A DNA stretch of 64,000 bases. Source: Macrostomum lignano (lineage: Eukaryota). The position numbers and the translations under genes are program-made. This document shows positions 8,516 to 37,685 of this stretch, piece by piece (positions within the stretch are counted from its first letter, which is position 1; each line of letters begins with the position of its first letter). Location: contig NIVC01000513.1 in NCBI GenBank assembly GCA_002269645.1, positions 494,416-558,415 on the forward strand. Reading direction: 5' to 3'. The notes below the pieces were generated by a model. That model did no database searches. It was given only the letters and a program-made list of their open reading frames with translations, and had not been told where the DNA came from.

Positions 8516-8532
8516 CTCCGTCTGTCTGTCTG
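8379..8532. repeat. (TGTC)n microsatellite in SLC6 intron 1
   Basis: Direct inspection. Confidence 0.96.
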
Positions 8533-8701
8533 CTTGTACATGTAATTTTGTATATAATGACAGTCCGTCTGTCTGGCTGTAACGATAGACTGTCTCTTAC
8601 TCTAGCTGTAATTTCCGCCTACCAGTCTTTAATGTGTGCCCAACAGTCTGTAAATGACAGTCTGTCCAAACGGGCATGCATGGCACCACCAAGTCGCTCA
8701 C

Positions 8702-8927
8702 CGCCGCCATACTTGTAGCACAGGTATGGGAACCGCCACACGTTGGACAGGTCCACAGCAAATCCCACAACAGACAGCAAGAAGTCGACCCTGGATCCCC
8801 AGCTCTCGCGCTCCCTCTGCTGCTGTCCGCCGCCGCTCCCATCCGCCCCAATTTGGGAGCCGGCCGCGCTCTGGCCGAGATCCACCACCTCGATGTCCTC
8901 CGTCTTGACCTCACCTCTGACGTTCAT
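8702..8927 (-). CDS. SLC6 exon 1 (N-terminus, TM1)
   Basis: ATG at 8927; MNVRGE...[21 protein letters not shown]; donor G|gtgagc; 226 nt, ends in phase 1. Confidence 0.9.
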
Positions 8928-9385: not shown

Positions 9386-10178
9386 AGCCCAGCAACTGAG
9401 GATCTGGCTTAGGAGGCTGGCCCAGCAACTGAGGATCTGGCTTAGGAGGCTGGCCCAGCAACTGAGGATCTGGCTTAGGAGGCTGGCCTAGCAACTGAGG
9501 ATCTGGGAGGCTGGCCCAGCAACTGGGGATCTGGCTTAGGAGGCTGGCCTAGCAACTGAGGATCTGGGAGGCTGGCCCAGCAACTGAGGATCTGGGAGGC
9601 AGGCCCAGCAAATGAGGATCTGGGAGGCTGGTGGCCCAGCAACTGAGGATCTGGGAGGCTGGTGGCCCAGCAACTGACGATCTGGGAGGCTGGCCCAGCA
9701 ACTGACGATCTGGGAGGCTGGCCCAGCAACTGACGATCTGGGAGGCTGGTGGCCCAGCAACTGACGATCTGGGAGGCTGGCCCAGCAACTGAGGATCTGG
9801 GAGGCTGGTGGCCCAGCGACTGAGGATCTGGGAGGCTGGTGGCCCAGCAACTGAGGATCTGGGAGGCTGGTGGCCCAGCAACTGAGGATCTGGGAGGCTG
9901 GTGGCCCAGCAACTGAGGATCTGGGAGGCTGGTGGCCCAGCAACTGACGATCTGGGAGGCTGGTGGCCCAGCAACTGAGGATCTGGGAGGCTGGCCCAGC
10001 AACTGAGGATCTGGGAGGCTGGTGGCCCAGCAACTGGGGATCTGGGAGGTTGGCCCAGCAACTGACGATCTGGGAGGCTGTCCCAGCAACTGACTGTTGC
10101 ATCATCAATCGCTACGGATCTGGCTGTCCCAGCAACTGAGGATCTGGGAGGACCCAGCAACTGGGAATCTGGGAAGCT
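9386..10178. repeat. 28/31-bp VNTR array 1 (ggcccagcaactgaggatctgggaggct[ggt]) upstream of the SLC6 ATG
   Basis: Direct inspection; source of the SSVAGPPASQILSCW shadow ORFs. Confidence 0.97.
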
Positions 10179-10745
10179 AACGGTGGCACAACCTGTAGGT
10201 GCGGATGACAGGTTTTAAGCCCAAGTTTTACTTTATCAGTCATAAAACTTCGTCGCACGGTTATTTAGATTTGCATTGTAAAACGCAATGAAAGTATCTA
10301 AAAAAGTTAATTACCAGCAAAGGCAATATAATGCGTTTAATTTTCACTTTATTCTGGTGTCTGAAAGTCTCTGCTTAAATTTAATTAACTCGTATATGAA
10401 ATGAAATAAAATAAAAGCCTATTTCGCTGGAACGGACAAGCAAAAGTCAAATATTCGGCTCCACTATGCTGCCCAGAACCTGAAGAAATGACGGTCTGCG
10501 TGTTTGTACAGAGCTCTGATTACACATTACCAAACATTTCAGCATGCAGGCATGTGGCGACCTGGACCGCAAATGGCAGACAGGAGTGCCAAAACGAACG
10601 CTCACTAGTACGAGTCCGAGGTGTAAAGGGTTGGCAAGGCTTCAAATTACTTCGTACCAGCGTACTATAATAACTCCAGGTCTTAAATAGCTTGTAGTAC
10701 GATTAGCACAGTAAGCAGGAACTTCTACAACTGCAGGTCGGCGGT

Positions 10746-12107
10746 GTCCCAGCAACTGGGGATTTGGGAGGCTGGTAGCCAAGCAACTGAGGATCTGGGA
10801 GGCTGGTGGCCCAGCAACTGAGGATCTGGGAGGCTGGCCCAGCAACTGAGGATCTGGGAGGCTGGCCCAGCAACTGAGGATCTGGGAGGCTGGCCCAGCA
10901 ACTGAGGATCTGGGAGGCTGGCCCAGCAACTGAAGATCTAGCTTAGGAGGCTGGCCCAGCAACTGAGGATCTGGCTTAGGAGGCTGGCTTAGCAACTGAG
11001 GATCTGGGAGGCTGGTGGCCCAGCAACTGAGGATCTGGGAGGCTGGCCCAGCAACTGAGGATCTGGGAGGCTGGCCAGCAACTGACGATCTGGGAGGCTG
11101 GTGGCCCAGCAACTGAGAATCTGGGAGGCTGGCCCAGCAACTGACGATCTGGGAGGCTGGCCCAGCAACTGACGATCTGGGAGGCTGGTGGCCCAGCAAC
11201 TGAGGATCTGGGAGGCTGGTGGCCCAGCAACTGAGAATCTGGGAGGCTAGCCCAGCAACTGAGGATCTGAGAGGCTGGCCTAGCAACTGAGGATCTGGGA
11301 GGCTGGCCCAGCAACTGAGGATCTGGGAGGCTGGTGGCCCAGCAACTGAGAATCTGGGAGGCTGGCCCAGCAACTGACGATCTGGGAGGCTGGCCCAGCA
11401 ACTGACGATCTGGGAGGCTGGTGGCCCAGCAACTGAGGATCTGGGAGGCTGGTGGCCCAGCAACTGAGAATCTGGGAGGCTAGCCCAGCAACTGAGGATC
11501 TGAGAGGCTGGCCTAGCAACTGAGGATCTGGGAGGCTGGCCCAGCAACTGAGGATCTGGGAGGCTGGTGGCCCAGCAACTGAGGATCTGGGAGGCTGGCC
11601 CAGCAACTGAGGATCTGGGAGGCTGGTGGCCCAGCAACTGGGGATCTGAGGCTGGTAGCCCAGCAACTGAGGATCTGGGAGGCTGGTGGCCCAGCAACTG
11701 AGGATCTGGGAGGCTGGTGGCCCAGCAACTGGGGATCTAGGAGGCTGGTAGCCCAGCAACTGAGGATCTGGGAGGCTGGTGGCCCAGCAGCTGAGGATCT
11801 GAGAGGCTGGTGGCCCAGCAACTGAGGATCTGGGAGGCTGGTGGCCCAGCAGCTGAGGATCTGGGAGGCTGGTGGCCCAGCAACTGGGGATCTAGGAGGC
11901 TGGTAGCCCAGCAACTGAGGATATGGGAGGCTGGTGGCCCAGCAACTGAGGATCTGGGAAGCTGGTGGCCCAGCAACTGAGGATATGGGAGGCTGGCCCA
12001 GCAACTGACGATCTGGGAGGCTGGTGGCCCAGCAACTGAGGATCTGGGAGGCTAGCCCAGCAACTGAGGATATGGGAGGCTGGCCCAGCAACGGAGTATC
12101 TGGGAGG
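10746..12107. repeat. 28/31-bp VNTR array 2 (same family)
   Basis: Same unit, about 45 copies estimated from length. Confidence 0.97.
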
Positions 12108-12460: not shown

Positions 12461-12552
12461 CTGAAAAGACAGCCAGTTTACAAATACATTTTGGAATAAA
12501 ATAAAATTATTTCACTAACGCTCTACTGCCAGTAGCAAAATGAGAATCTCAC

Positions 12553-13209
12553 CGTCTGTTGAGTCGGTTTAGTAGGCTCGGCTTCTGCTTTTCGCTTTAA
12601 TTTCTTCTTTTTTGATGGAGGCGGTGAAGGTTGACGTTGCTGCAACTCTTCCAGCATCTCTTCGTCCGCTTGATCGCTGTCGTCATCTGGTTCATTTTCC
12701 TCAGCCTCTTCTTCATCAACGGAAGCTGATTCGGAATCGCCTTCTGAGTCTGAGTCTCGGACAGGCTTGACAGCTGGGCGCAGCTTCTCGCCCGGCCTCT
12801 TCAAGCCTTGAAGCGTCATTCTGGCGCTGTACTTTCTATACAGCGACGTGTTCGGCTCGAACGGCTGACCCGATGATCTGGCAGATTTATAAGCCAGCAG
12901 AGCGGCGAGGAACCGCCTGCCGCTCGTGTGCCTGGCCACATCCACCGGCGTGTCCGACACAAACCGGCAGGTCAGCTGGCAGAACAGCCGCTGTGAGGCC
13001 GCCGGGGCGTCGCCGTCATCACCAGCAGCCCCATTGGACCTGGACGGTTCAACCAGGCTGGCATCGATAAGGTAGCGGCGGAACTCCTGGGGCACGGAGC
13101 AGCTGGCGGTCCATCTGGACAGAGCTTTGTCGAACTTCTTACCGCCGGCATAGGCCAGTAGGGCATCGGATGAGCGCGGCAGCTCGTGGCCAGTCAGGGT
13201 GCAGTGGAT
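12553..13209 (-). CDS. SURF2: SURF2 exon 2
   Basis: actgccag|ATC CAC TGC ... CAG ACG|gtgaga; 657 nt open. Confidence 0.9.
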
Positions 13210-15591
13210 CTGGCAGTTTTAATTAAAGTTTTGTATAAACTTTTTTATGAGAAAGTTGTTGTAGTTGATCAATAGATAGATAGTATTATGCAAACAAAGA
13301 TTCAAGGATCAGAATCAAAACATGAATGCTAGTTAATCTAACTCACTATCATATTATTGCAAACATCTATGTTGCAGTCTTAGGCCTCACTCTAATGCTT
13401 GGAATCAGATAGGAAAAAATATTATGAACAACCCAAAATTCAACTTGCAAAATTATTTATATTGTAGTATAACAAAAATTAATACATCTAAATTTGCCAT
13501 CTAATAAAAACAACAGCTATGGCTGCAGGAAGATACAGAACCAATGGAATAGATGCAATAGAAATGGACAAATATATTGCCAGTTTCAAAGCTTTAGAGT
13601 CAGGGACTCAGCAATAGAGATTTTTAAGCCACATGCATATTGTGTAGTTGGAGTGATAGGGGCAAAGTTTAGATATATGCTTGTTAATGAGTAGCTATTG
13701 AATTAAATATCAATAAAAATTAAATAGGAAGTTATAGGAGATTAATTAACTACAAATATGGATACATTTTGATAATTAGGAAAGTTTTGATTACAATGGA
13801 AATTTAAACTGACTTTTGCATTGCATAATGTTGTTAATATGCAGATTAGCTTCTTTAATCTTTTTAAAAATGTTGCCCAGTTTAATAAATCTTTTTTATT
13901 TCATAATTGACTGAATGTTAGTATTTATAGATTAGCTAGGGCCTGTTATTAAAAAAAACTTGCTTATAGTAATTTTATGAAGTATGTCTCTTTAGCAGTG
14001 GGTCAATCAAAATTTAATATCAATGGGTTACAAAAATTATAAGCCTATCTATTTTAATTTTTCATGTTTTACCTTTTGATCTTAATGTTGTTTATTTAAC
14101 TTTGTCCAACTCTATATGGACCTAAAAATTATAGTATTCTAAAAGACCTGATCCCAATTCCAATTCCCAAATCCTGATCCCAGAACTAAGAAAAAATATT
14201 CTAAATCTAAATTTCCAATCCCATGCAATGATTTCAATCTAATCTAACTTTTAATAGGCCCATAAATAAAAATAAAATGAGATCATATATATTATAGCAA
14301 AATTAATATTTTAATTTAATTAGGTGCTATCTATGTACCATCTATGTGTATGAATACTAGCCAGGTGGTATGGAGTCTATCTATATAAGAATACTTGTAT
14401 AGGTGTCAGGCCTAGCTGCCTAGTGTGATAACCAACTATGATCTTTAGGCCTAAGACCTAATATTTAATGTTTTTGTCACGTTATTGGCGTAGAGGCTAT
14501 GACCCTTAGAAGGGCCGTTTTACGAGAGTTGTTGTAAGTTGTAGTCTCAAAATGAATCGAGTCAAGTCTTGAGAAGCGGATTGTGTAGCGGAGCACTTGG
14601 CGTACTAGGTAGGTAACTGCCATAGTTGTTTTATTGTTGAGATCAATATTCAAATTGGTTAATGTTAATACAGAACTTATTGCGCTTTTGGGACACTGGC
14701 GGCTGCAACAATGGGTTTGAATTGAAGGTGAATTAGAAATTGTAGTTGAGTGGTAGGCGAAGGCGAGTGATGCAAGGCGATGCAACGTGGTGAGTAACAG
14801 CGATGAGCACAGCAGTGGCAGATGCATAGTGGTGAGATTGGCATTAGCCGTGGCAGACAGTGGCAGGCAGTGTAAATAGGCTGGCCCAGACAGAGGAGCC
14901 GTGGCGAGAGATAAGGAGGCTCGAGACAGAAGGCAGGAGAAGGAAAACAAGAGCCGCGAAGTGAGGAGGCCCCCAGCCCGCCACCAGGCGGGGGTTAATA
15001 AAGAGCGCAAAAGGGGGTAGCATAAAACACGGAGAGTTTTCATTGGCTGGCGAGAGAACTTGAAATTATTGATCGTGCCAAAATTCACAGACGAGTGCAT
15101 GGCCTACCAAATACACAGTGAATTAGCAGTTGATACAGATTATTTGCACGCTACTATAAGTAAATGTTAAAATAAACTATTGGAGAAATTAAAATGAGAA
15201 ATTGCAAGGGAAACTATAGTCCAATGGCCCTTTTGCGAGACCATTTAAACTAGCAATGTCACAGTTTTCTTCAGATTTATAATGGGTCTAGTTCTAGCTG
15301 AATTGGCTGAAAGTTGGCCTTGGATTTTTTACATATCGAAATAAGTAGGTTTAATATATTTTGTAAGTTATATGGATCTGATTCTGGATGATATCATGCT
15401 TTCTTATTGAATTGACTAGGCCTAGGCCTAAACAAAAGCAAAATTAAGCCTAGTTGATATCTAAAAGACTATATTTAACAAATCAACCTTAGAAAATGAT
15501 AATGAGACGTATTGATATATTCTTGGCAATTTTCAGTTCTACCATTTGAAAAGATAATCTAACTTCAAAACAGAAAGAAGTGCAAACGTAC

Positions 15592-15654: not shown

Positions 15655-17990
15655 GATAACGCTAGATCTGATCAAATAAAAGTTAAATATCAATTTAGCT
15701 ACGGCTTAGTTTTTAATCGGAAATATTGACGTACCAAGACCAAAAGGTTTTAAATAGAAAAATAGTTCACCAGTGTCCATGAGATGAGATTAAATCACAC
15801 ATGATGCGATTTTAAAATAGATTACTTCTCCCTTTACTCTGTGTTATATCTTTTAGAATAAAAATATTTATGTACACTCTCGAACTTTTAATTTTTATAA
15901 TAAAAAGCATCGCTGGCAAACATTAATCGGGATGAAAGGTAGTTATTTTTGTTATTATGACTCAAGAGTCATCGCGTGTTTCAACTTTTTTGCTTTCTAG
16001 GACAAGCTCATGTATGTCGCATGTATGCAAGTCCATGTCACATGTATGCAAATTTTACTGTATGAGGACCACATCACAAATGTTAAACAGAACTTGATCA
16101 AGGGTAAGTAAGCTGCAGATTTATTTTTTAAAAGATGAGGAAGTCTACAATGGTAACTAAGTCGCATTGCTACATATGCTTTTAGTCAAGGACCGCAGTA
16201 GTAGCGAGTGGTCCTGCTTTTAGTCTGTATAAATATTTACACACAAAAGCAACAACGAAACATTTGATAAATATTTTATTGGATTTACTTATTACTGACA
16301 TTAATAAATCATTATTAATGATTTACTTATTACATTTAGATGAAAAAAAAAACAATTTTTAAAATTAATTTGAAAACGTTGGCATACAGTTGCATACAAT
16401 AACTGCTTTTACATGTTTTTCGTATGCAACATGAACATGCTAAAAGTGAATCTCATCAAAATTTTTGGCAATATATTTCCGCAGTTGTAACCATTTTTTT
16501 AAATATCGTAGGCCCAAAAGCATTCAGAGTTTAACTGCTTGCTCCATGGTCAAAAGCTAAAGTACGACGTAGATATGTATTAGCTAAGTGCAGAATTTTT
16601 CAAGAACAAGAGTAATATTGGCCGTTGGGAGAAGAGAAAGCTACATTTTATTAACATCTATCATCAAATTCACATTTAAAGTAAAATTTGCAGTAGGGAA
16701 TGCGCCAAATCTCAATTGTTAAAGTGAATTGCTCAATAATTCAGCTACTGTATTGTCAATTGATTTCACTTTAGCAACTGCTATAGCCCTCCGGGTAGCC
16801 GAAAAAGTAATTAATTCTTCTTCTTTTGAGCTAGCAGACGCCCAGGATATTGCTAGTAGAGTTTACAATATTTGAATGCTTGCTCAGCCTTCTTTATAGA
16901 CATAAAATATGGACGATTTTGTCCGTGACAGTCAATGCGAGCTGGTCGATTAAATCCACCAGGACCTCGATTGTAGCCGACAGTCAAAAAGGCTAATAGA
17001 TCCGTCTCTCTCTACCGAGGGCAGGGATCAGTGCTGCGATCCTGTCGGCGCAGGCTATGCGAGTGAAGTGAGGCGGGGGAATCAGCGGGGATTTCTGCTT
17101 CGCTTTGTTGTCCAAAGCTAGTCTGAATAATCTGCGTAGTGGGGAGGGGTGGCAGCTACAAAGTCCATTTTTATGGCGTATTCAGCCCCCCGACAGGGAC
17201 GGAATCGCATTGGGGAGGGGTTGGAAGCCAGTCCGCGGTATTATTTAGCTTGCACCTCCCTGCTCAACTCTCGACTCCCGTACACTCGTCGTTACTATGT
17301 CTGCTTGTACTCTGAATTCCCACCAGGGAGAGGGAGAGAGAGAACTGGCCTAGGAGGGCTTCTATTGTTGCATATAAAAGTTGGCCCCCAAAGCTGTTCG
17401 CTCCCAAAGCTCTACTCATGCAGAGCTACAGCTAATTGCCTTTAGCTTTCTGAGAACTACTATAAATATATTTTTACAGTAGGCATTAACTAGTCTTTCT
17501 TAAATCCCCGATCTTCCACTTAAACTTGTTTACAAGACCGTTATTGTTGGGTGAGAATTTTTGTTTTCATTATCAAAACTTGTCAGAGCAAAGTTGTCGA
17601 TTTTATATCGGAACACGCGCACGAGAATTACTCATTTACATTTTCTACACTCGGTGCAGATCTTAAGATCTTAAACCCTGCCCTCTCCCTTAACTAAACA
17701 GAGAGCATTGACCACTCAATCTGTTGCGGAAACTCACACCTCTATTAGCCAGTAATAAGGCACAGAGAGAGCTGGTTGTTTAGTTTGACCGGAACTAAGT
17801 CATTGAGAGTCTTATAAGATACTGATCTGAGGCAGTCCGAGAGACGCGGACTACAGGCGTTGGTCAACCAGCTCTGAGAGTTTCCAATCTAATTAGCATA
17901 ATTAGCAGGGTTTTGATCTCTCAGCCAACCCTCTGACTTCTGGCAACCTCTGAATTGGAGCAGTGAACGGTGAGAAAAGCGGAGACCCAC

Positions 17991-18102
17991 ATGGACTCGC
18001 ACCTCTACGGGCGGGTGGCGCATCCGGACCTCGCTCAGACCTATCTACCAGTCAGCATCCTGCAGCTGGATGAAGCTGACCGAGCAGTTCTCAGAGTGGC
18101 CG
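17991..18102 (+). CDS. Spectraplakin first coding exon (ends ..LDEADRAVLRVA-D)
   Basis: In-frame TGA upstream at 17964, ATG at 17991, donor G|gtgagt in phase 1; matches the plakin D.A.RAVLRIAD junction motif. Confidence 0.85.
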
Positions 18103-19432
18103 GTGAGTTTCATTGATTTTTTGCTATTCTCTTTTGGCAGTTTCGATCCAAGGACCACCAATGGTAGCGCTTCAAACAATTAAACAAACTCTAAGACCCC
18201 GATTTTGAGCGATGAACTCGACAAATGGATCAAATATTAAACAACTCATTGATCATCTGTAGTTCGTATAATTCCACAGATAAACTATCAGGAAATTTTT
18301 CAGAAATGTTTTTAGTGCCTTCTATCTTACAATTTTGTGCTAAATTTGTCCTTAAAAATGTAGTCCTTGGTTCGATCGCCTTCACGCGAAATTAATGGTT
18401 TAATGCTGTCCAAATTGCATGGAAAATAATACGTTTTGCAATGCACCCGAAAGTCTTCCCTGTAGTTGCCCCAGGGGGTTTTCGAAGATACAATTGGCAT
18501 GCAAAACCTGTGCAGTGTGCAGCTTCATCTGTCCACAATTTTTAGCAGGCAATGCTGAGCATAGTGGCACTGCTCTCTGCAAAAGCCAGAGGGTTGTTTA
18601 ACAATGGAGTCTCAATGCCAGTGTCTGTGAGGGTTTCTGATGCGGCAAATTTAGGTGTACATTTGCAGTTTAATGACACACAACGTAACAGTCTGGAAAT
18701 TTGAATCCTGTAAAACAAAAATAAGAGAGAAAATGTTGAAGTATCGTCGGCATGCTCAAAGCTGCTCAGATAAAACTTACAAAATATTATAACAAAGTTT
18801 ATGATAGCGAAAAAATCCACTATTAGCTAATGCCAAAAGCAGCAATAGCCGTGTGAGCTCATGTGTTGCTAAAAATAGCAAGAAGCGCCCAACTACAATT
18901 CTCTTGCCTGCTTTTGGAAAGCAGAATTGTGAGAGCTCAAACCTCCCCCGGCCCTCCCCGGCATGGGCGATTTCCCTTGGTCTCGACCTCTCTCCCCCAG
19001 AGTGCGCATGATTCATGCTGAGGTGAGCTGACTCAGTATCTCGGGACTGTACATTTTTAACATTTTCTGCTCTGCTTTTTGGCGATGCAGTGAGTACAGT
19101 GGGACGGCACGAGCATTAGAGTAAATTTTAATTAGTTTTTTTGGTCTGCGTCTTAATAACCCGGCCTTGCGATTAATGTCGCAAATTTATGCTTGGAACA
19201 CATTGGCTTTTTTGGAGCAGGTTTGCGCGTTTTGATTGGGTCAATTAAAAACCATGCAAGAGGGAAACACTGCCTCGGAATTCTTAATCGTTAGTAAATT
19301 TCGCAGTTCATTTTATCGCCCACCAGTTTAAACAAAATATTGTTGAAGACTAAATACATTTTCTATAAACTCGCTCTGAAATTTAGAAAACATATATTTT
19401 GTTATTACCAAACTTTCTTTTAGTACCTTCGG

Positions 19433-20177
19433 CCGCATCTAGTCACTTCAGGTCCTTCAGTACCGCATCTTAGTCACTTCAGGTCCTTCAGTATCGCATC
19501 TTTGTCGCTTCAGGTCCTTCAGTACAGCATCTTAGTCACTTCAGGTCCTTCAGTACCGCATCTTAGTCCCTTCAGGTCCTTCAGTACCGCATCTTAGTCA
19601 TTTCAGGTCCTTCCGTACCGCATCTTAGTCACTTCAGGTCCTTCAGTACCGCATCTTTATCGCTTCAGGTCCTTCAGTACCGCATCTTAGTCACTTCAGG
19701 TCCTTCCGTACCGCATCTTAGTCACTTCAGGTCCTTCAGTACCGCATCTTTATCGCTTCAGGTCCTTCAGTACCGCATCTTTGTTACTTCAGGTCCTTCA
19801 GTACCGCATCTTTATCGCTTCAGGTCCTTCAGTACCGCATCTTAGTCACTTCAGTTCCTTCAGTACCGCATCTTAGTCACTTCAGGTCCTTCAGTACAGC
19901 ATCTTAGTCACTTCAGGTCCTTCAGTACCGCATCTTAGTCACTTCAGGTCCTTCAGTACCGCATCTTTATCGCTTCAGGTCCTTCAGTACCGCATCTTTA
20001 TCGCTTCAGGTTCTTCAGTACCGCATCTTTATCGCTTCAGGTTCTTCAGTACCGCATCTTTATCGCTTCAGGTTCTTCAGTACCGCATCTTTGTCACTTC
20101 AGGTCCTTCATTACCGCATCTTGGTCACTTCAGATCCTTCAGTACCACATCTTAGTCGCTTCAGGTCCTTCAGTACC
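19433..20177. repeat. 31-bp minisatellite (cagtaccgcatcttagtcacttcaggtcctt), about 24 copies
   Basis: Direct inspection; spectraplakin intron 1. Confidence 0.97.
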
Positions 20178-20817
20178 CAAAAAACCTAGAAGCTCTACTA
20201 AAATTTTTGATAAATTGATCGAATATATTCAACAACTCATAGTTCATCTGTATGAAATCACAAAAGTACAAACAGTACCTAGCATTTATAGAATAGCCGC
20301 TCATATTGATTTATGTTAAGTACTGCACCTGAAGTTTCTTCTATTTTCTCCACAGCTCCTACCTGACTTCCTTACCCTTCCCACCGGCCTAATTCTCTCT
20401 CGCCTCGTCTCCAGACTGAGCGAGATTGCATCGATTTTTAGTCTCCACAGTGCACCTGCAAAGGTGTACACATTCTGTTTTCCATGCAGTCTGCTGCTGC
20501 CCCAGAGGTAGAGGAGAGCGTTGGGGAAGAAGGCAAAAAACACGGAGAGAAAAGTTGAGAGGTGGGACTGGAGAATGAAAATGTACAGCCAGTCTCTCAT
20601 TCTCGCCCTAATCTTGAGTCCATGGTTTTCCATTAGCGCTTTGGGCAGCTGGCATGTTATAACTATGGGAGCATGAGCTTATCTTCATAAGGGGGTTTTT
20701 AAACTCATTTCACTAATTTGACAAAACAACTTAGGAAATTAATTTTACCTTTACAGTCAGAAATATGCTCTAACGTACGAAGTTCTGCAATGCAGTGATG
20801 CTAGTTTGCTTGTTTGC

Positions 20818-21458
20818 CAGGGTAGTTTTTACCTGTTAGACAGGGTAGTTTTCATCTGTTAGACAGGGTAGTTTTCACCTGTTAGACAGGGTAGTTTTCA
20901 CCTGTTAGACAGAGTATTTTTCACCTGTTAGACAGGGTAGTTTTCACCTGTTAGACAGGGTAGTTTTCACCTGTTAGACAGGGTAGTTTTCACCTGTTAG
21001 ACAGGGTAGTTTTCACCTGTTAGACAGAGTAGTTTTCACCTGTTAGACAGGGTAGTTTTCACCTGTTAGACAGGGTAGTTTTCACCTGTTAGACAGGGTA
21101 GTTTTCACCTGTTAGACAGAGTAGTTTTCACCTGTTAGACAGGGTAGTTTTCACCTGTTAGACAGGGTAGTTTTCACCTGTTAGACAGGGTAGTTTTCCC
21201 CTGTTAGACAGGGTAGTTTTCACCTGTTAGACAGGGTAGTTTTCACCTGTTAGACAGGGTAGTTTTCACCTGTTAGACAGGGTAGTTTTCACCTGTTAGA
21301 CAGGGTAGTTTTCACCTGTTAGACAGGGTAGTTTTCACCTGTTAGACAGGGTAGTTTTCACCTGTTAGACAGGGTAGTTTTCACCTGTTAGACAGGGTAG
21401 TTTTCACCTGTTAGACAGGGTAGTTTTCACCTGTTAGACAGGGTAGTTTTCACCTGTT
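20818..21458. repeat. 23-bp minisatellite (ttttcacctgttagacagggtag), about 28 copies
   Basis: Direct inspection; near-perfect copies. Confidence 0.98.
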
Positions 21459-21815
21459 TGATTGGTGAAATTGTGACCATCGCTTGAGAGGCGGCCGCAA
21501 TCTGGCTTCACAATGTCTAACAAATAATAATTATGCGCATTTAGAAACGGAAGAGCATGTTGGAAAGACTTCCTTCGGTCCCCGTTTTAACAACGAACTA
21601 TTCAACTCGATAAACATAGACTCTGTGGTGATTGGTTCTTAATAAAACTTCCTCTACTTTTTGACAAGAGGCAAACCCTGCAATGTCACGGTGTGGTTCA
21701 TAAAGATTAGTTTGCACAATTGTTAAGACCATTCGCACCAGGTCAATCTATTCTATCATCAGCCATTCGCAATGGATATTCTTGGATTTGTTACTAACAT
21801 TATTTTACCATTCAG

Positions 21816-21877
21816 ATGTCCGAGACGGCACACAGAAGAAGACATTTACTAAATGGGTCAACAATCAGCTTATTAAG
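21816..21877 (+). CDS. Spectraplakin CH1 exon a (DVRDGTQKKTFTKWVNNQLIK)
   Basis: ttcag| ... AAG|gtgcgt; 62 nt. Confidence 0.95.
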
Positions 21878-21959
21878 GTGCGTCAGTTGAAACATTGTGA
21901 TTGCCTTTGTGAAATTTTAACAAAACAGTTTTGCTAATAAATTTCAACAATTATTGCAG

Positions 21960-22049
21960 AAAGCCTGCAAAATCCGCGACCTGTTCAACGACCTGCGTAG
22001 CGGCACAGCGCTCATAACTTTGCTAGAGATTTTGTCGAAACAGTCACTG
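21960..22049 (+). CDS. Spectraplakin CH1 exon b (KACKIRDLFNDLRSGTALITLLEILSKQSL)
   Basis: ttgcag| ... CTG|gtaaga; 90 nt. Confidence 0.95.
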
Positions 22050-22137
22050 GTAAGAATTTGCAACTTTTGCGATTCTAGTTAAAGTGCAGCTTGTACTTCA
22101 TAAACAAATAATGGCCGATCATTGTCTACGCCCGCAG

Positions 22138-22218
22138 CCGCGCGAACGAGGCTGCATGCGATTTCATTATTTGCAAAATGTGGAAACTGCATTGAATTTT
22201 CTCACCTCACGCCGTGGT
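22138..22218 (+). CDS. Spectraplakin CH1 exon c (PRERGCMRFHYLQNVETALNFLTSRRG)
   Basis: cgcag| ... GGT|gtaagt; 81 nt. Confidence 0.95.
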
Positions 22219-22339
22219 GTAAGTGACTACCGCGACCGAGTTTTTATAAATAGTCTATACTTGCTACTTAGTTCCCAATTAAAAGTAGTATAAGCAAGCG
22301 TATAAAACTTCTAGACTAAATTATTCAAAACAATTCCAG

Positions 22340-22432
22340 ATTCGCTTAGTAAACATTCGCCCAGAAGATATAGTGGACGGAAATCCTAAACTGACGCTGG
22401 GTCTGCTCTGGGTTATTATTCTGCACTATCAG
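22340..22432 (+). CDS. Spectraplakin CH1 exon d ([31 protein letters not shown])
   Basis: ttccag| ... CAG|gtgaga; 93 nt. Confidence 0.96.
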
Positions 22433-22584
22433 GTGAGAGAAGTGTGTTTTGTGAAATGCATGCGCCACGTTAATTCATCGGCCGGTTGGTGATGGGATGA
22501 CACAGTGGCGTAGCTAGGGGGTCAAGGACTGCTGCGGTGTTGCCCTTTAATCAGCTGGTATAGTAATAGCCTTCCAGTTAGTAG

Positions 22585-23196
22585 CTGGTGCTGGCGCCCC
22601 TGGTGCTGGCGCCCCTGGTGCTGGCGCCCCTGGTGCTAGCGCCCCTGGTGCTGGCGCCCCTGGTGCTGGCGCCCCTGGTGCTGGCGCCCCTGGTGCTGGC
22701 GCCCCTGGTGCTGGCGCCCCTGGTGCTAGCGCCCCTGGTGCTGGCGCCCTGGTGCTGGCGCCCCTGGTGCTGGCGCCCCTGGTGCTGGCGCCCCTGGTGC
22801 TGGCGCCCCTGGTGCTGGCGCCCCTGGTGCTGGCGCCCCTGGTGCTGGCGCCCCTGGTGCTGGCGCCCCTGGTGCTGGCGCCCCTGGTGCTGGCGCCCCT
22901 GGTGCTGGCGCCCCTGGTGCTGGCGCCCCTGGTGCTGGCGCCCCTGGTGCTGGCGCCCCTGGTGCTGGCGCCCCTGGTGCTGGCGCCCCTGGTGCTGGCG
23001 CCCCTGGTGCTGGCGCCCCTGGTGCTGGCGCCCCTGGTGCTGGCGCCCCTGGTGCTGGCGCCCCTGGTGCTGGCGCCCCTGGTGCTGGCGCCCCTGGTGC
23101 TGGCGCCCCTGGTGCTGGCGCCCCTGGTGCTGGCGCCCCTGGTGCTGGCGCCCCTGGTGCTGGCGCCCCTGGTGCTGGCGCCCCTGGTGCTGGCGC
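22585..23196. repeat. 15-bp GC-rich minisatellite (ctggtgctggcgccc), about 41 copies
   Basis: Direct inspection; source of the LAPLV / WCWRP / GAPAP shadow ORFs. Confidence 0.98.
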
Positions 23197-23982
23197 TCCG
23201 CAGGGTGAATGATTGATCAAATCACTTTGCAGTTTGACAAACGAATTTAAAAAATGAGCCATTGTAGTCTGGAATTCAAAATTTAGAGGGGTTTAAATTA
23301 AAGGTATAAAAGTACTTTTTTAATTGCAGACAAGTATTTTATTGCTCACGCCCTGATAAGCCAGGCGCCTAAAATTAAACTTTAAATAATTTATGATCGC
23401 GGCATGCGATAGAGGGACATGTACATTCATTATTAAACTTCAGACTGACCACAATAAATAGATAACACTCTGTACTTGATGCAACTAATAAAAATAAAAA
23501 TAGAAGGAATATTGAAAGCCAGTCCGCTTAAAATCAGTAACCATTGTCCAACCCTTGTAATGTACATTACTGCGGTACATCAGTCTGTCTGTATTTGATC
23601 TGCGCATGATCTGCACACGCTATTCTTAGATAGGGCCGCTAATTGGGCCTGTTTGTGGTGGGTGGCGTCAACAAGTCAGTTCGCCTAAATGAGTCAATTT
23701 GACTTTTTTGGTGGTCAGTGCGGTGGGTGGAAATGCAGTTATTATCAATCTCTCACTTATCTTAGCTCAGCTGTATCTTCTCTATTCAATATTTTTGCCC
23801 GCATCGAGCAGAGGACACGGCAAGGCCTTGCGCAGTTCAGGACCCCCCTTAAGCCACTAAGAATCCAACTGCTCTATCTCTGTTTCTCTTTAGTCCGAGA
23901 TAGCTGCAGTGCAACGAGTCAGAAAGCAAAAAACACATTCTGACGCCCAGTTTAAGCAACTTTTTTCACTCGTTGAATTTAA

Positions 23983-24222
23983 ATGCGAAAGAGCAGCCTG
24001 TGGCTTGGCAGCACAGGCGATTTAGTATGGGCGCTAACGGCTGCAGGGCTTGCTGTAGCTTTTTTCACCTTCGCCATGAAGCGCTTTGAGAAATTGTTTT
24101 CTAGCAATAAGAAGCAGAAACAGCAGAAAACTCAAAAGCAGAAAAAGGATAACGGAGAGGCAAAGCCTCATCACCAGCATCACGGCTGGCGGCCGTTTAA
24201 TTGTTTCTCGCATAACCGACCT
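23983..24222 (+). CDS. Candidate alternative first exon encoding an N-terminal signal-anchor (80 aa)
   Basis: ATG at 23983, hydrophobic LVWALTAAGLAVAFFTFAM followed by KRFEK..KKQKQQKTQKQKK, and a consensus CCT|gtaagt donor in phase 0 matching the CH2 exon at 28326. Confidence 0.6.
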
Positions 24223-24347
24223 GTAAGTGCTTGCTCGTTTCATTCACCCAATACGTAAGACTTTACCCGAATTTTCGTTCAATTTGATAGACTAAGTTTT
24301 ACAGTCACCTAGAAAAAATGCTTTTTTTGAGCTAAATTGTGCTTGGT

Positions 24348-25186
24348 CTTGTCTATGATCAATCTAGATTCTTGTCTATGACCAATTTAGATTCTTGTCT
24401 ATGACCAATATCGATTCTTGCCTATGACCAATCTAGATTCTTGTCTATGACCAATCTCGATTCTCGTCTATGACTAATCTCAATTCTTGACTGTGACCAA
24501 TCTCGATTCTTGTCTATGACCTATCTCAATTCTTGTTTATGACTGATCTCGATTCTTGGTTTTGTGACCATTTTATATTCTTGCCTATGACCAATCTAGA
24601 TTCTTGTCTATGACCAATCTAGATTATTGTATATTACAAATCTCGATTCTTGTCCATGACCAATCTAGATTCTTCCTTATGACCTATCTAGATTTTTTTC
24701 CATGACCAATCTAGATTCTTCCTTATGACCAATCTTGATTCTTGTCTATGACCAATCTAAATTCTTGTCTATGACCAATTTAGATTCTTGTCTATGACCA
24801 ATTTAGCTCCTTGTCTATGACCAATTTCGATTCTTGTCTATGACCAATCTAGATTCTTGTCTATGACTAATCTCGATTCTTATCTGTGACTAATATCGAT
24901 TCTTGCATATGACCAATCTAGATTCTTGTCTATGACCAATCTAGATTCTTGTCTATGAACAATCTAGATTCTTGTCTATGACCAATCTCGATTCTTATCT
25001 GTGACTAATATCGATTTTTGCCTATGACCAATCTAGATTCTTGTCTATGACCAATCTAGATTCTTGTATATTACAAATCTCGATTCTTGTCCATGACCAA
25101 TCTAGATTCTTCCTTATGACCTATCTAGATTCTTGTCTATGACCTATCTAGATTCTTGTCTATGACCAACCTAGATTCTTGTCTAT
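24348..25186. repeat. 23-bp minisatellite (atgaccaatctagattcttgtct), about 36 copies
   Basis: Direct inspection; core palindrome aatctagatt. Confidence 0.96.
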
Positions 25187-25476
25187 ATCCACGTTGATTT
25201 TAGTATATGACCATAATGATGGTCAGTGTGATAGTTCTCATGCAAGAAAGTATTTTAAGGTACACTCCATCATTTTAGCGCAAATTTATTAACTCCGTTA
25301 CTCGACCAAATAAATTGTGCATACAGCTTCTTAATTAATACAAATAGAAGAGCCTTTTAAAATATTAGGGTTTGTGTCCCTTTGTTTGGCAGAGAGCTGG
25401 ATTATATTTAAAAAAACAAAAAATATGCTTTGGTCTCCAGTCTGTGGACGCTTTTCTGTCTTTCCGCTTGCCTTAG

Positions 25477-25566
25477 TGCTGTTTTACACAAGACAATGCT
25501 TTACTAAGGTGCACCTGCTTCCCACTCAGGCTGAAAATGCCTCTGGGCCTTTCTCAGCTTTGCCAG
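25477..25566 (+). CDS. Candidate 90-nt in-frame cassette exon (CCFTQDNALLRCTCFPLRLKMPLGLSQLCQ)
   Basis: cttttctgtctttccgcttgccttag acceptor, CAG|gtatga donor, phase 0-0, no stop. Confidence 0.35.
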
Positions 25567-26027
25567 GTATGAGAAACGCTTTTCTTCAAAGTCACGCTCA
25601 AATGGTCCATGCGAACTCCAACTAGCCGTATTATTTGTCTATGCAGTGCCCGAGCACTTCTACAGCCTGCTCATTTTTCAAACCCTCCGTCTACCCTCTC
25701 TGACAGTGCGACGACTAAGTTAAAACGCTTTTCTTCCTTTACTCAGACAGTGAAATATGGAAACTGCTTTATTAGATCGGGTTGAAGAGAATTGGCTTTT
25801 CCCCCAGGGCAAATTACAGTGTTGGTTGGCTCTGTATCACCCAGTTCTAACATTCTCTGGATTGTCTCCATATGCTTTTATTAGTCGCCGAGTAGAACAG
25901 TTTTAGGAAGAGAAAATATTTTATCGATTTTCCCCCTGTGCGCTTCGACATTGAAGCTGTCAATAAGAATTAGAAATGTAATTTCCTCTGCAATGCAAAG
26001 CTTTCCCCGCACAGCGGAGAAATCCAG

Positions 26028-27569
<1,542 letters not shown>

Positions 27570-28325
27570 ATGTGCGCAATTTGCTTGCATGCAGTGTCAA
27601 TTAGAACTGATTCGGCCAGATTACACACTCAACTGTGCCCTCACAAGCAAAATCGCAAAGTTAAGCTAATAGAGTAAGCCGGGTCAAGAGGGCTATGTGA
27701 GAAATTTAGAGAAAGCCGACTCAAAACTATGAGAAGATTGTTGTGCACACCGAGTTTGGCTGAGTTGGTAAAAAGGAATTTTTCGCTCTTCCAATGGTTA
27801 GAAATGAAATTAGCTGGATGGCCATGTTTGCCAAGGCAGGGCTTGGGGCCTCCTGCGTACAGCCGTCTCTCTACTAGACGCATGGTAGGGCCAGAGAGAG
27901 CTCTGCCAGTCTCGAACAATGGATGGAGGCCTGGTGAGAGATGAATTGTGTTTGAGAACATTGTGAAGAGACTGGCTAGGAAAGACGGTCGTTGAGTAGT
28001 GCCCCCTGGCTAGCTCTGAAGGGGCGATGAGGCGGTTGTCGCAGCTGTTCTCAGGTACAAATGGTTTTGCAGAATTCGCCGCGAGCCAAAAATCTTTCTC
28101 AAGAGAGGCCAGTAGCCCTTATTTTCTTGAAATAAAGGCGTTTTATTATTAGCATGAAGTCGAGAGGAAGCTGAGCGGCCCATAGACACTTTCCCAGCGC
28201 TTTAGATTTGTAAGATTTTTACAAATGCTGCTTATATTTTTATTAATAACTTGATGATGTAGTTGAAGAGTAAGTTACTGAGTTATCCATAATTATCATT
28301 ATTTCTTCCATCGAATTTCGCGCAG

Positions 28326-28513
28326 CTATCCGAGGTCCTTCCTGACCAAGCAGCCGCCGGTGCAGCGACCGTCACAAGCGACGTCGCAGTTCGAGACTAC
28401 CTGCTCGACTGGTGCAGCAAGTCTCTGAGCGACTACCCCGACCTGCGGCTGGACAATTTCTCAGCCTGCTGGTCGGACGGGAGAGCGTTTCTCTACTTAA
28501 TTCATCGGTTCAG
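28326..28513 (+). CDS. Spectraplakin CH2 exon a
   Basis: cgcag|LSEVLP...YLLDWC...DNFSACWSDGRAFLYLIHRF-R|gtgagt; 188 nt. Confidence 0.94.
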
Positions 28514-29022
28514 GTGAGTCGTGAATAGGTTTACACGACCAGGTGAGCTTTACGTACAGCTCTATTATCGATAACGCTTGAGTGCAGGTTGGGTGTGTGC
28601 TAATTCTAGTGCCTGTAAAATAATTACAATTAGTTTTCATTTGGCGCAATATTATTTTTACAATAATATCTTTTTATTTCCATCTGTAGAATTGTAGAAT
28701 ATAATATCCTGGAAAAAGTCAATTTTAGAGGACATCCAATGTCAGTAATTAAGCACACCGATACGTAAGCGGGCACACGCTCCTACAGGGTGTACAGCGG
28801 GTCTTGACTTTCTCAGATTGTCAGGGCATGTACGCACTCACCGCCTTATTAGGGAAGGCCCTAGGAAGGCTAATTTTCGCGCGCTCGAACCCCAAACTGG
28901 TGTGACCCAGATAATCAGGTTCATTAGCGCGAAAGTCGGACGAGTTACAGCTGAGCTACTTAGGCTCCCCATCAGCATCCGCTTACCATCGAATCAACCA
29001 CAGTTGCACTTCTCACTCCCAG

Positions 29023-30514
29023 GCCGAACCTGGTGGATCCCAGCCGCATCCCAGCCATGTCAGCTGAGGAGCGGCTCAGGCTCGCATTCGCGCTCAACGA
29101 GCGGCACCTGGGCGTGAGCAGCCTGCTCGACCCGGAGGATGTCAACATGCCAGAGCCGGACGAGCGCAGCCTCATCACCTATGTGTCCTCCATTTACGAC
29201 GTAGTGGCGGAGCACAGGACGCCTCAGCAGCGGCAGCGACAGCCGCTCGGCGCTGCGAGCGGCGCATCGATAGGCGACAGCAGCTGGGAGGAGTACCGGC
29301 GCAGCGCGCTGGAGCTGCTTACCTGGCTGCGCCAGTCAACCTCGTCTGCCGATTTAGTCGGCCGCGACCTGACCAGCGGCTTGTCGCAGATGCGAGCCAT
29401 CGCCGAACGCTTTGAGGCGCAGCACAGAGCCGACGCCGAGCAGCGGATGGCTCAGAAGTCTGCTCTGGTTCGTCGCTACGACGAGCTTCTATCAGGCGTC
29501 GGCAATGTCGGCAGCGTCCGCATCGAGCCGGAGCTTCGCCCGGACCAGCTGGAGCGCGCCTGGGAGCGCTACAACCTGGCGGTGAACGAACGCGAGCGAG
29601 CGCTGCAGCAGCGAATCGCCAAACTCGAGCGGCTCTACAAGCTCGGCGACAGCGTCCGCAACGAGGCCTCAGAAGCGGAAGCTCAGGTCCGGGCGATCGC
29701 GTCGGAGCTGCAAAGCCTGTCGCCAGACGCACATCCGATGGACGCCGAGAGGGCTCTCCGCGGCTTGACTTCCGGCCTGTCCGAGGTCGGTCAGCGCGTT
29801 GACAAACTGTTCAACCAGGTGCAGGAGCTGCGCGAAGAGCAGTACAGCCAGGCTGAGCACCTGTACCACCGCCTGTGCAGCCTGCACCTGTCTTACTTGG
29901 ACCTGAACCGCCAGGTGGACTCGGCATCCGCGAAGCGGGCCAGCCGGGCCGGGTCCAGCACCAGCCAGCAGTTCCGCCGGCACGCTGAGCAGCTGCTGCA
30001 GCAGGGCTCGACCTCAGCCGGAGGAGTCGGCAGCGGATTCTACGACGAGGTGGCGAGCGTCAGCCAGGCGTTCTCCTCGTCGCCGGCCTACGCGGACCTC
30101 CGCCGCTGCATGGCGTGGATTCGTCAGCGGGAGGAGCAGCTGCGCAGATCGCAGCAGCCGCCAGCTGGCGCGGACGTTGCCGCGGTGCACGACATCGCCG
30201 AGCTGCTTCGTCGACTAAGCGCTTCGGTTATTCAGCAGCGCGCGCAAATTGACGCCTGCGAAAGCGCTCGGGCCGGCCTGTCGGCTGGCGAGGAGCGCGA
30301 GACCTTTGACCGACTGCTGGGCGAGCTGGACGCGGCCTACAGGGCGCTGTTGCAGGCGGCCAACCGGAGGCTGGCCGAGACCGAAGAGCTGCTGGCCTTC
30401 ATGGAGAGCGCCGAGGCCGAAGTGGCCTGGCTGGCCGAAAAGGAGTCCGAAGTCCTTGGACACGATTGGGGCTCGTCTGGATTGGACACCGACGATGTGG
30501 AGATCTACTTTAAG
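29023..30514 (+). CDS. Spectraplakin CH2 end and plakin-domain spectrin repeats
   Basis: cccag|G CCG AAC; LLDPEDVNMPEPDERSLITYVSSIYD; ..WLAEKESEVLGHDW..; AAG|gtagga. Confidence 0.95.
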
Positions 30515-37119: not shown

Positions 37120-37685
37120 GTATGGCGCGCAGTCTCGGCTGGTTGCAGCCTGGTTCTCTGGTTGCAGCCGTTTCTGTGGCCGGAGACGGGCTGACCATTG
37201 AATTAGGACTATTTTCCTGAGATCAGAAGCTTTTCGTTTGCTTTTCATAATCTGAGTGTGTTTGTCTAACTGTAGCATTTGCCGCTAATGTACAGAATAC
37301 TGCCAGTAGTTAAAAGCATAACATCCTTCGTAGCCACTATAAATGCAATAAGGTTCACTCTAGGAAACTTTCGGTTAGTTAATTTACCTTAGTGTCAGGT
37401 ATTACACTCTTATAAGTCATTGGCGAGAAGTTTCAACAATCAGCAGTTCAGCAGAGTCAGAGTAAGTTGTCGCAAAAGCTCAGGTTTTGGCAACTGTTTT
37501 CTTTCGTCGCATATTCAGTAGTCTTCTTATTGGGATATTGGCTTTACTCGTGGTCGCTGGTTCATATTTACACTTTGTAAAGTTTTACGCATGTCCGGTG
37601 TTTCCTGGGCTTTTTTCATCCGCTGCCAATACCCTGTTTAGTGTTCATATCTCCTCACTTCTCTCTTCGCACCCAACGGTTTCAG

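What the first reader, a model, noticed from the sequence alone, without database searches (positions are those of the whole stretch)
23983..24222. Hidden alternative first exon: membrane signal-anchor fused to a CH1-less spectraplakin
Inside the 5.9-kb intron between CH1 and CH2 lies an ATG-initiated 80-codon ORF ending at a consensus CCT|gtaagt donor in the phase of the CH2 exon. It encodes a 19-aa moderately hydrophobic helix (L14-M32) followed at once by a Lys-rich stretch, the pattern of N-terminal signal-anchors such as Tom20/Tom70 and plectin 1b. Known TM-anchored plakin isoforms (plectin 1b, dystonin-a2) keep both CH domains. A TM plus CH2-only form would be an organelle tether largely uncoupled from actin, which to my knowledge is not a described combination.
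Basis: partly seen in the sequence, partly recalled or inferred. Interest (0 to 1): 0.8.

Follow-up and report, generated by a model that had tools for sequence, protein, structure and literature searches.

The report
Predicted membrane-anchor first exon, flatworm spectraplakin
Inside the big intron of a flatworm (Macrostomum lignano) cytoskeletal-linker gene lies a start-codon exon that would fit in frame onto the second actin-binding half-domain and add a membrane-spanning helix; it looks more exon-like than chance, but no transcript or related sequence could be found to show it is used.

Summary
The window is the Macrostomum lignano spectraplakin locus. The CH1-CH2 intron (22433-28325) holds an ATG-initiated 80-codon frame (23983-24222). 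An in-frame TAA precedes the ATG. The frame ends at CCT|GTAAGT in phase 0 and joins the CH2 exon (28326) in frame. Residues 14-32 pass transmembrane thresholds and are followed by a Lys-rich flank.

It is the only ATG frame of at least 40 codons in the intron ending in phase at a GTRAG donor (null P about 0.1-3%). It has a 247-nt ATG-free leader and sits in a GC island that stops at the donor. Its in-frame codon score matches the true CH1 exons.

About 30 codons are T-poor low complexity, so they are stop-free by composition. The peptide has no homologue anywhere. The only M. lignano models are split at this intron. No transcript or congener DNA was reachable.

CH2-only isoforms from an internal start are a conserved spectraplakin feature (Shot C-type, DST/MACF1 type 3). 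Dystonin-a3/b3 already pairs a putative myristoyl anchor with a single CH domain, so the novelty claim is overstated.

Verdict: a plausible (about 0.5) new variant of a known kind. A chance ORF is the main rival.

The parts
23983..24222 (+). Candidate alternative first coding exon: ATG + 80 codons (MRKSSLWLGSTGDLVWALTAAGLAVAFFTFAMKRFEKLFSSNKKQKQQKTQKQKKDNGEAKPHHQHHGWRPFNCFSHNRP), ends in phase 0
   Evidence: Only in-phase ATG frame of >=40 codons at a GTRAG donor in the intron. Codon log-odds +0.11/+0.12 in frame against -0.37/-0.30 out of frame.
24223..24228 (+). Donor splice site GTAAGT; fits the M. lignano donor motif GT[G/A]AG
   Evidence: Motif from PMC8629364. One of two GTAAGT in the intron.
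24022..24078 (+). Codons 14-32, predicted transmembrane / signal-anchor helix LVWALTAAGLAVAFFTFAM
   Evidence: KD19 = 2.01, Hessa sum -0.59. AlphaFold2 single-sequence helix 11-48; pLDDT 77-86 over residues 11-40, falling to about 50 beyond.
24079..24147 (+). Codons 33-55, Lys/Gln-rich basic flank (KRFEKLFSSNKKQKQQKTQKQKK). Its 3' part (from 24103) lies in T-poor low-complexity DNA.
   Evidence: T content 3-13% in 24103-24192
23736..23982 (+). 247-nt ATG-free stretch directly upstream of the start codon (putative 5' UTR / core promoter), closed by an in-frame TAA at 23980-82
   Evidence: P about 0.016. The canonical first exon shows the same property by my reading of the sequence.
23600..24222 (+). 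GC island (0.45-0.49) in an AT-rich intron (0.29-0.38) that ends at the donor
22433..28325 (+). CH1-CH2 intron, 5,893 nt. Contains a 15-bp array (22585-23196), a 23-bp array (24347-25186) and (CT)n (26028-27569).
22340..22432 (+). Last CH1 exon ([31 protein letters not shown]), ends in phase 0
28326..28513 (+). First CH2 exon (LSEVLPDQ...LIHRF), starts in phase 0 and contains no in-frame ATG. This is the acceptor the candidate exon would use.
   Evidence: Pfam CH domain E = 9.8e-20.
29023..30514 (+). Exon with the rest of CH2 and the start of the plakin domain
17991..18102 (+). Annotated canonical first coding exon (MDSHLYGRV...LRVA) of the CH1+CH2 isoform, used as a positive control
   Evidence: Codon score +0.54.
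21816..22218 (+). First three CH1 exons (21816-21877, 21960-22049, 22138-22218)

Best explanation
The segment 23983-24222 is the coding part of an alternative first exon of the Macrostomum lignano spectraplakin gene. It would be driven by an internal promoter in the CH1-CH2 intron, the position where fly Shot C-type and vertebrate DST/MACF1 type-3 isoforms start. Its GTAAGT donor would splice to the CH2 exon at 28326, giving a CH1-less isoform with this order of parts: a 13-residue N-terminal tail, a 19-residue hydrophobic helix, a polybasic Lys/Gln stalk, a His-rich linker, then CH2, the plakin domain and the rest. By the positive-inside rule the helix would insert with the short N-terminus outside and the large C-terminal body in the cytosol. 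That would tether a weakly actin-binding spectraplakin to an organelle membrane (ER/nuclear envelope or mitochondrial outer membrane; undecidable in silico).

Shown: ORF, stop-bounded ATG, donor, phase, hydrophobicity, exon-like composition.

Inferred: transcription, splicing, translation, insertion, topology and function.
For: - Frame, donor and phase were verified.
- It is the unique candidate in the intron and is unlikely under null models: 0.1-0.8% for >=80 codons, 2-3% for >=60 codons.
- A 247-nt ATG-free leader precedes it (P about 0.016). The annotated first exon appears to share this by my reading of the sequence.
- The GC island ends exactly at the donor.
- The in-frame codon score is +0.11/+0.12 against -0.3/-0.4 out of frame. 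That equals or exceeds the true CH1 exons (0.02-0.10). It is well above the neighbouring 84-codon ORF in the same island (-0.27) and the 25477 pseudo-cassette (-0.31).
- The CH2 exon has no in-frame ATG, so an intact CH2-only protein needs a leader ATG.
- Literature: every studied spectraplakin has CH2-only isoforms from alternative start sites (bioRxiv 10.1101/122010; PMC3352950).
- TM competence: KD 2.01, Hessa sum -0.59, C-flank net positive. Helix 11-48 is the most confident part of an AlphaFold2 single-sequence model.
- No AATAAA/ATTAAA for about 1 kb downstream, which argues against a stand-alone gene.
Against: - No transcript, junction read, CAGE or orthologue evidence could be obtained.
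- The peptide has no relative in 5.8 billion clusters, in 1.84 billion representatives by full phmmer, in Pfam, or in JGI metagenomes.
- The three UniRef M. lignano models (A0A1I8GIW8, A0A1I8GI37, A0A1I8F5V4) do not contain it.
- About 30 of the 80 codons are T-poor low complexity that cannot hold stops.
- The first 34 codons score no better in frame 0 than in frame 2.
- The codon score is far below the GC-rich large exons (mean 0.48) and the canonical leader (0.54).
- Only 20 non-coding control windows were available, and one of them scored higher.
- 14% of real non-coding ATG-ORFs of the window also carry a KD>=1.6 segment in their first 40 residues.
- -3 is T, but the canonical ATG has C at -3, so the start context is uninformative.
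Confidence: 0.5

Rival explanations
1. Chance open frame (pseudo-exon). The ORF is produced by a GC-richer unique island plus a T-poor A/G-rich low-complexity stretch that happens to abut one of the intron's two GTAAGT hexamers. It is never spliced or translated.
For: - Orphan peptide; absent from existing gene models.
- 30 codons are stop-free by composition, and frame 1 is also open over 24086-24222.
- Real non-coding DNA here has 5 ATG-ORFs of >=80 codons in 13.4 kb, about 2.5 times the Markov expectation. One is an 84-codon ORF immediately upstream in the same island.
- Hydrophobic segments are common in non-coding ORFs.
- The codon score is only marginally positive.
Against: The features coincide: a stop-bounded ATG, an in-phase perfect donor, a uATG-free leader, a GC drop at the donor, and frame-specific codon bias. 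Together they give a nominal P of about 1-5% or less. It also sits exactly where spectraplakins are known to keep an internal first exon.
Confidence: 0.3
2. CH2-only isoforms are made another way, by spliced-leader trans-splicing onto the CH2 acceptor at 28326. The 35-nt M. lignano SL ends in ATG. That ATG would be in frame (ATG|CTA TCC = M-L-S-E-V), so no leader exon is needed and the ORF is a bystander.
For: - SL sequence CGGTCTCTTACTGCGAAGACTCAATTTATTGCATG; about 30% of M. lignano genes are trans-spliced (PMC8629364).
- The acceptor is in phase 0.
- Two UniRef models begin exactly at LSEV with no Met.
Against: - The acceptor (GCGCAG) does not fit the enriched trans-acceptor motif [T/C]TNCAG.
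- The models beginning at LSEV are mirrored by a CH1 model ending at LHYQ+V. This looks like a gene model split at a repeat-filled intron rather than SL evidence.
- This route does not exclude the candidate exon.
Confidence: 0.1
3. An internal poison or cassette exon. Acceptor-like sites upstream (for example tctctgtttctctttag|TCC at 23894) could pair with the 24222 donor, so that inclusion after CH1 introduces a premature stop (regulated unproductive splicing or a truncated CH1-only product).
For: Pyrimidine-rich AG sites at 23766, 23894 and 23900. By my own reading of the sequence, every frame entering from CH1 (phase 0) meets a stop before 24222.
Against: Nothing positive supports it. It does not explain the stop-bounded ATG ORF, the uATG-free leader or the frame-specific codon bias.
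Confidence: 0.05
4. An independent nested orphan gene encoding a 91-residue single-pass membrane protein (ORF 23983-24258, read through the donor to TAA).
For: The ORF continues 11 codons past the donor to a stop. It has a TM-like helix.
Against: No AATAAA/ATTAAA between 24223 and 25308. No homologue. The exact product is not on record in any assembly. A perfect in-phase donor would be an unexplained coincidence.
Confidence: 0.05

Closest known systems
Spectraplakin CH2-only N-terminal isoforms (Drosophila Shot C-type; vertebrate DST/BPAG1 and MACF1 type 3)
   Same: An alternative start between the CH1 and CH2 coding exons, with a private leader sequence joined to CH2 and weakened actin binding. 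Here the candidate sits in the CH1-CH2 intron and joins the first CH2 exon in phase.
   Different: The leader has no sequence similarity to any known leader. Its use is unproven in this species.
Dystonin-a3/b3 (BPAG1a3)
   Same: [quoted passage not shown]
   Different: Dystonin-a3/b3 uses a lipid anchor (Met-Gly motif), not a hydrophobic helix. The candidate begins Met-Arg, so it cannot be N-myristoylated.
Dystonin-a2 (BPAG1a2) N-terminal transmembrane isoform
   Same: A spectraplakin with an N-terminal TM domain that targets perinuclear/ER membranes.
   Different: It keeps CH1+CH2. The TM claim has itself been disputed. No sequence similarity was detected.
Plectin 1b; Tom20/Tom70-type mitochondrial outer-membrane signal anchors
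   Same: An N-terminal, moderately hydrophobic helix with basic residues just C-terminal. Plectin 1b is inserted into the outer membrane by its exon-1b sequence (PMC7017221). The candidate's KD of 2.01 is above Tom20 (1.83) and Tom70 (1.07); those reference sequences were recalled from memory.
   Different: No homology: no Pfam MAS20/Tom hit. By my own knowledge, plectin 1b keeps both CH domains. The higher hydrophobicity would equally suit ER insertion.

Membership tests
Spectraplakin (Shot/MACF1/dystonin) gene | CH1+CH2 actin-binding domain, spectrin-repeat plakin domain and plectin repeats in one locus | tested here: met
   tblastn to a plectin ABD recalled from memory. Pfam CH. Spectrin and Plectin repeats in downstream exons. 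UniRef M. lignano CH-domain proteins at 99-100% identity.
CH2-only (C-type / type 3) spectraplakin isoform | Alternative first exon located between the CH1 and CH2 coding exons | tested here: met
   The candidate lies at 23983-24222 inside intron 22433-28325.
CH2-only (C-type / type 3) spectraplakin isoform | Leader exon joins the first CH2 exon in frame | tested here: met
   Phase 0 donor and phase 0 acceptor; the junction reads SHNRP|LSEVLPDQ. This shows compatibility only.
CH2-only (C-type / type 3) spectraplakin isoform | Transcripts that actually start there and use the junction | not testable with these tools
   No M. lignano transcriptome is in the searchable collections. Even the constitutive exons retrieve only UniRef models, and the exact look-ups were empty.
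N-terminal signal-anchor membrane proteins (Tom20/Tom70/plectin-1b-like) | N-terminal hydrophobic segment of about 17-22 residues, long and hydrophobic enough to span a bilayer | tested here: met
   KD19 = 2.01, Hessa sum -0.59. Predicted helix 11-48.
N-terminal signal-anchor membrane proteins (Tom20/Tom70/plectin-1b-like) | Net positive charge in the C-terminal flank (cytosolic side) | tested here: met
   KRFEK is net +2 in 5 residues. Seven K/R against one E in the 15 following residues, compared with net +1 in the N-terminal tail.
N-terminal signal-anchor membrane proteins (Tom20/Tom70/plectin-1b-like) | Sequence homology to a known anchor family | tested here: not met
   No Pfam family above cut-off. 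Zero phmmer hits in 1.84 billion representatives.
N-terminal signal-anchor membrane proteins (Tom20/Tom70/plectin-1b-like) | Membrane integration and organelle localisation | not testable with these tools
   Needs an expression and fractionation experiment.
Dystonin-a3-type myristoylated leader | N-terminal Met-Gly myristoylation motif | tested here: not met
   The peptide starts MRKSS.

The most novel reading that the evidence does not exclude
M. lignano makes a spectraplakin isoform whose N-terminus is a true transmembrane signal-anchor joined directly to CH2, with CH1 absent. This would be an integral-membrane, largely actin-uncoupled tether between an organelle and microtubules. It would be a lineage-specific reinvention, with a helix, of what dystonin-a3 does with a lipid.
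Probability: 0.45. Interest if true: 0.5.

Novelty: new variant of a known kind. Interest (0 to 1): 0.35.

Why it matters
Spectraplakins gain their many cellular roles largely through alternative N-termini. What the CH2-only (type 3 / C-type) forms do is poorly understood. A flatworm version whose leader is a real membrane helix would show that membrane tethering of the CH1-less form has arisen more than once. M. lignano is transgenesis-competent (from my own knowledge), so organelle-cytoskeleton coupling without strong actin binding could be tested there. If the exon is not used, the case is a caution instead: stop-free low-complexity DNA next to a consensus donor can mimic a leader exon.

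Tried and rejected
- Homology of the 80-residue peptide. Word-indexed search of 5.8 billion clusters at E<=10: nothing. Full phmmer against 1.84 billion representatives: 0 hits. Pfam: only the CH domain of the fused construct, with DUF3899 below cut-off. Back-translated scan of JGI metagenome contigs: 600 pattern matches, none confirmed.
- Exact-product look-ups to obtain a second genomic copy or a transcript contig. P0001, P0002 and the 91-residue read-through ORF are not on record. The clusters hold only the UniRef entries.
- The absence of the peptide from the protein collections cannot be read as 'not expressed'. The collections contain no M. lignano transcript-derived proteins even for the constitutive CH1 and CH2 exons.
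- Repeat or transposon origin. The 23300-24330 region is unique within the window, and no paralogous leader was found by tblastn.
- Non-coding RNA. No Rfam match with E<=1 in 17000-29500. No SL-RNA gene copy in the window.
A 30-codon open AG...GT segment exists, but its codon score is -0.31, so there is no support.
- Shared promoter k-mers between the canonical and candidate leaders: one 9-mer only, uninformative.
- Start-codon context: uninformative, because the annotated start also lacks a -3 purine.
- The AlphaFold2 model without an alignment is poor overall (pLDDT 46.8). It was used only for the helix call and was not sent to fold search.

Full report
**What the window is**

A tblastn with a plectin actin-binding domain (sequence recalled from memory) places four CH1 exons and two exons carrying CH2 plus the start of the plakin domain:
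- CH1 exons: 21816-21877, 21960-22049, 22138-22218 and 22340-22432.
- CH2a: 28326-28513.
- Rest of CH2 and start of the plakin domain: 29023-30514.

Downstream ORFs carry spectrin and plectin repeats. The CH2/plakin segment is 99% identical to a UniRef protein of the flatworm Macrostomum lignano, and the CH1 segment is 100% identical to another. The accessions are A0A1I8GI37, A0A1I8F5V4 and A0A1I8GIW8. The locus is therefore the M. lignano spectraplakin (Shot/MACF1/dystonin-type) gene. Its annotated first coding exon lies at 17991-18102.

**Checking the observation**

- The ATG is at 23983, directly preceded by an in-frame TAA (23980-82). The frame cannot be extended upstream or entered from an upstream coding exon.
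- Eighty codons follow, to 24222, and then CCT|GTAAGT.
- The exon ends in phase 0, as does the last CH1 exon (…LHYQ|gtgaga).
- The CH2 exon starts in phase 0 (gcgcag|CTA TCC), so the join reads …SHNRP|LSEVLPDQ….
- The intron is 22433-28325. About half of it is three tandem arrays: 15-bp x 41, 23-bp x 36, and 1.5 kb of (CT)n. The candidate sits in a 1.15-kb unique segment between the first two arrays.
- Residues 14-32 (LVWALTAAGLAVAFFTFAM) have a Kyte-Doolittle mean of 2.01 and a summed Hessa value of -0.59. They are followed by KRFEKLFSSNKKQKQQKTQKQKK.
- An AlphaFold2 single-sequence run calls residues 11-48 one helix. It is the most confident part of an otherwise poor model.

**Is it more than chance?**

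Support for a real exon:
- It is the only ATG frame of at least 40 codons in the intron that ends in phase 0 at GT[AG]AG. GTAAGT occurs only twice in the intron.
- In Markov-chain surrogates of the non-microsatellite intron, at least one such frame of >=80 codons appears in 0.7-0.8% of trials (GTRAG) or about 0.1% (GTAAGT). For >=60 codons the figure is 2.3-2.7%.
- A 247-nt stretch before the ATG contains no ATG (P about 0.016). By my reading of the sequence, the annotated first exon has the same property.
- GC is 0.45-0.49 from about 23600 to the donor and 0.29-0.38 on both sides, falling right after the donor.
- A codon log-odds score trained on the large exons of this gene against its non-coding DNA gives +0.11/+0.12 in frame and -0.37/-0.30 in the other frames. 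The genuine CH1 exons score 0.02-0.10. The 84-codon ORF just upstream in the same island scores -0.27.

Caveats:
- Real non-coding DNA of the window holds about 2.5 times more long ORFs than the Markov null.
- Nt 24103-24192 are only 3-13% T, so they cannot contain stops, and a second frame is open there too.
- The first 34 codons are not better in frame 0 than in frame 2.
- Only 20 non-coding control windows were available, and one scored higher.
- 14% of real non-coding ATG-ORFs carry a KD>=1.6 segment near their start.

My estimate is a nominal P of about 1-5% for the configuration. That is significant but not overwhelming.

**External evidence**

None could be obtained.
- The peptide has no relative in any collection.
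- This absence says little about expression. The collections hold no M. lignano transcript-derived proteins even for the constitutive exons.
- The three UniRef models are split exactly at this intron. One ends …LHYQ+V and two begin at LSEV without a Met. They neither bridge the intron nor test the exon. A split at a repeat-filled intron is the simplest reading.
- Exact-product look-ups returned nothing.
- The region is unique in the window, has no Rfam match and carries no SL-RNA gene.

**How it most likely works**

The CH2 exon has no in-frame ATG. An intact CH2-only protein therefore needs a start codon from upstream.

Reviews state that all spectraplakins have CH2-only isoforms generated from alternative start sites: Shot C-type and DST/MACF1 type 3. 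This gives a substantial prior that this intron holds such a first exon, and the candidate is the only strong one in it.

I therefore favour (confidence about 0.5) an internal-promoter first exon spliced to 28326. The flank after the helix is far more basic than the N-terminal tail (seven K/R against one E in 15 residues, compared with net +1). By the positive-inside rule (established knowledge), the helix would insert with the N-terminus outside and the C-terminus in the cytosol. That places CH2, the plakin domain and the microtubule-binding end in the cytosol.

The hydrophobicity exceeds that of the Tom20/Tom70 anchors (sequences from memory). ER or nuclear-envelope targeting is thus at least as likely as mitochondrial targeting, and sequence alone cannot decide this.

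**Rivals**

- Chance pseudo-exon (0.3), for the reasons listed under the caveats.
- SL trans-splicing (0.1). The M. lignano spliced leader ends in ATG and about 30% of genes are trans-spliced (PMC8629364). SL addition at 28326 would be in frame (M-LSEV…) and could supply a CH2-only isoform without any leader exon. However, the acceptor does not fit the enriched trans-acceptor motif, and this route does not exclude the exon.
- Poison or cassette exon (0.05). Upstream acceptor-like sites at 23766, 23894 and 23900 could be used, and frames entering from CH1 hit stops. Nothing positive supports it.
- Nested orphan gene of 91 residues (0.05). No poly(A) signal lies within 1 kb, there is no homologue, and the in-phase donor would be a coincidence.

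**Comparison with what is known, and novelty**

In architecture this is a type-3 / C-type spectraplakin isoform, which is a known kind.

Dystonin-a3/b3 is described as a putative myristoylation motif preceding a single CH domain (PMC6975176; PMC3352950). What is not described is a transmembrane-helix leader on a CH1-less form:
- Dystonin-a2 has a TM region before a full actin-binding domain.
- Plectin 1b is inserted into the mitochondrial outer membrane by its exon-1b sequence (PMC7017221). By my own knowledge it keeps both CH domains.

The candidate is not homologous to any of these leaders and starts Met-Arg, so it cannot be myristoylated. If real, it is a new variant of a known kind and appears to be lineage-specific.

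**Verdict**

- Observation: confirmed.
- Interpretation: partly supported.
- Existence as a used exon: plausible but unproven.
- Novelty: modest.
- Interest: 0.35.

Noticed in passing
window 28326 (acceptor) with the M. lignano spliced leader: The 35-nt M. lignano SL ends in ATG. Trans-splicing onto the phase-0 CH2 acceptor would put that ATG in frame (M-LSEV...). Two UniRef models start exactly at LSEV without a Met.
   Followed up: partly
window 22433-28325: The existing M. lignano gene models are split at this intron. A0A1I8GIW8 ends at LHYQ plus one intron-encoded Val, and A0A1I8GI37 / A0A1I8F5V4 begin at the CH2 exon. A0A1I8F5V4 looks like a frameshift-ridden second copy (78% identity, in blocks).
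   Followed up: partly
window 22585-23196, 24347-25186, 26028-27569: Three large tandem arrays fill half of the CH1-CH2 intron: a 15-bp unit x 41 (98% match), a 23-bp unit x 36, and (CT)n of 1.5 kb. They create long spurious ORFs on both strands. The 23-bp array starts 125 nt after the candidate donor.
   Followed up: partly
window 40853-54208: A single 4,451-codon open frame begins with plectin-repeat sequence. It is then filled by hundreds of roughly 11-residue units (TGLAGSEQQPT) arranged in higher-order repeats of about 2-3 kb. This is an unusually large internally repetitive exon for a spectraplakin.
   Followed up: no
window 38200-39500: A 12-residue repeat (MSTQQVDP[AS]Q[SP]G) reiterated about 35 times inside the 815-codon ORF 37641-40088.
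   Followed up: no
window 54663-61586: A 2,307-codon ORF, acidic and Ser-rich. No Pfam domain was found in the part tested (60003-61583). It ends with plakin-repeat-like GLxDPxTG motifs.
   Followed up: partly
window 7952-8927 (- strand) and 12523-13092 (- strand): Upstream neighbours on the opposite strand: exons of an SNF/SLC6 sodium:neurotransmitter symporter (Pfam E = 3e-29 and 6e-17) and a SURF2-like ORF (E = 7e-13).
   Followed up: partly
window 3085-5512 and 9475-12091: Kilobase-scale low-complexity and tandem repeat blocks with strong GC skew give 800-codon ORFs in several frames on the minus strand (PPSPP / LLLPHP type, and a repeat of roughly 17-18 residues of SQILSCWATSLPDPQLLG type). 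They are probably satellites rather than genes.
   Followed up: no
window 23297-23493: A cluster of six AATAAA/ATTAAA hexamers in 200 nt of very AT-rich intron, just upstream of the GC island. This could be an intronic polyadenylation region for a CH1-only transcript, or simply AT-rich sequence.
   Followed up: no
window 14477-15100 (- strand): A 207-codon ATG ORF with no Pfam match in the region upstream of the spectraplakin first exon. It was counted as non-coding in my controls but might be a gene.
   Followed up: partly
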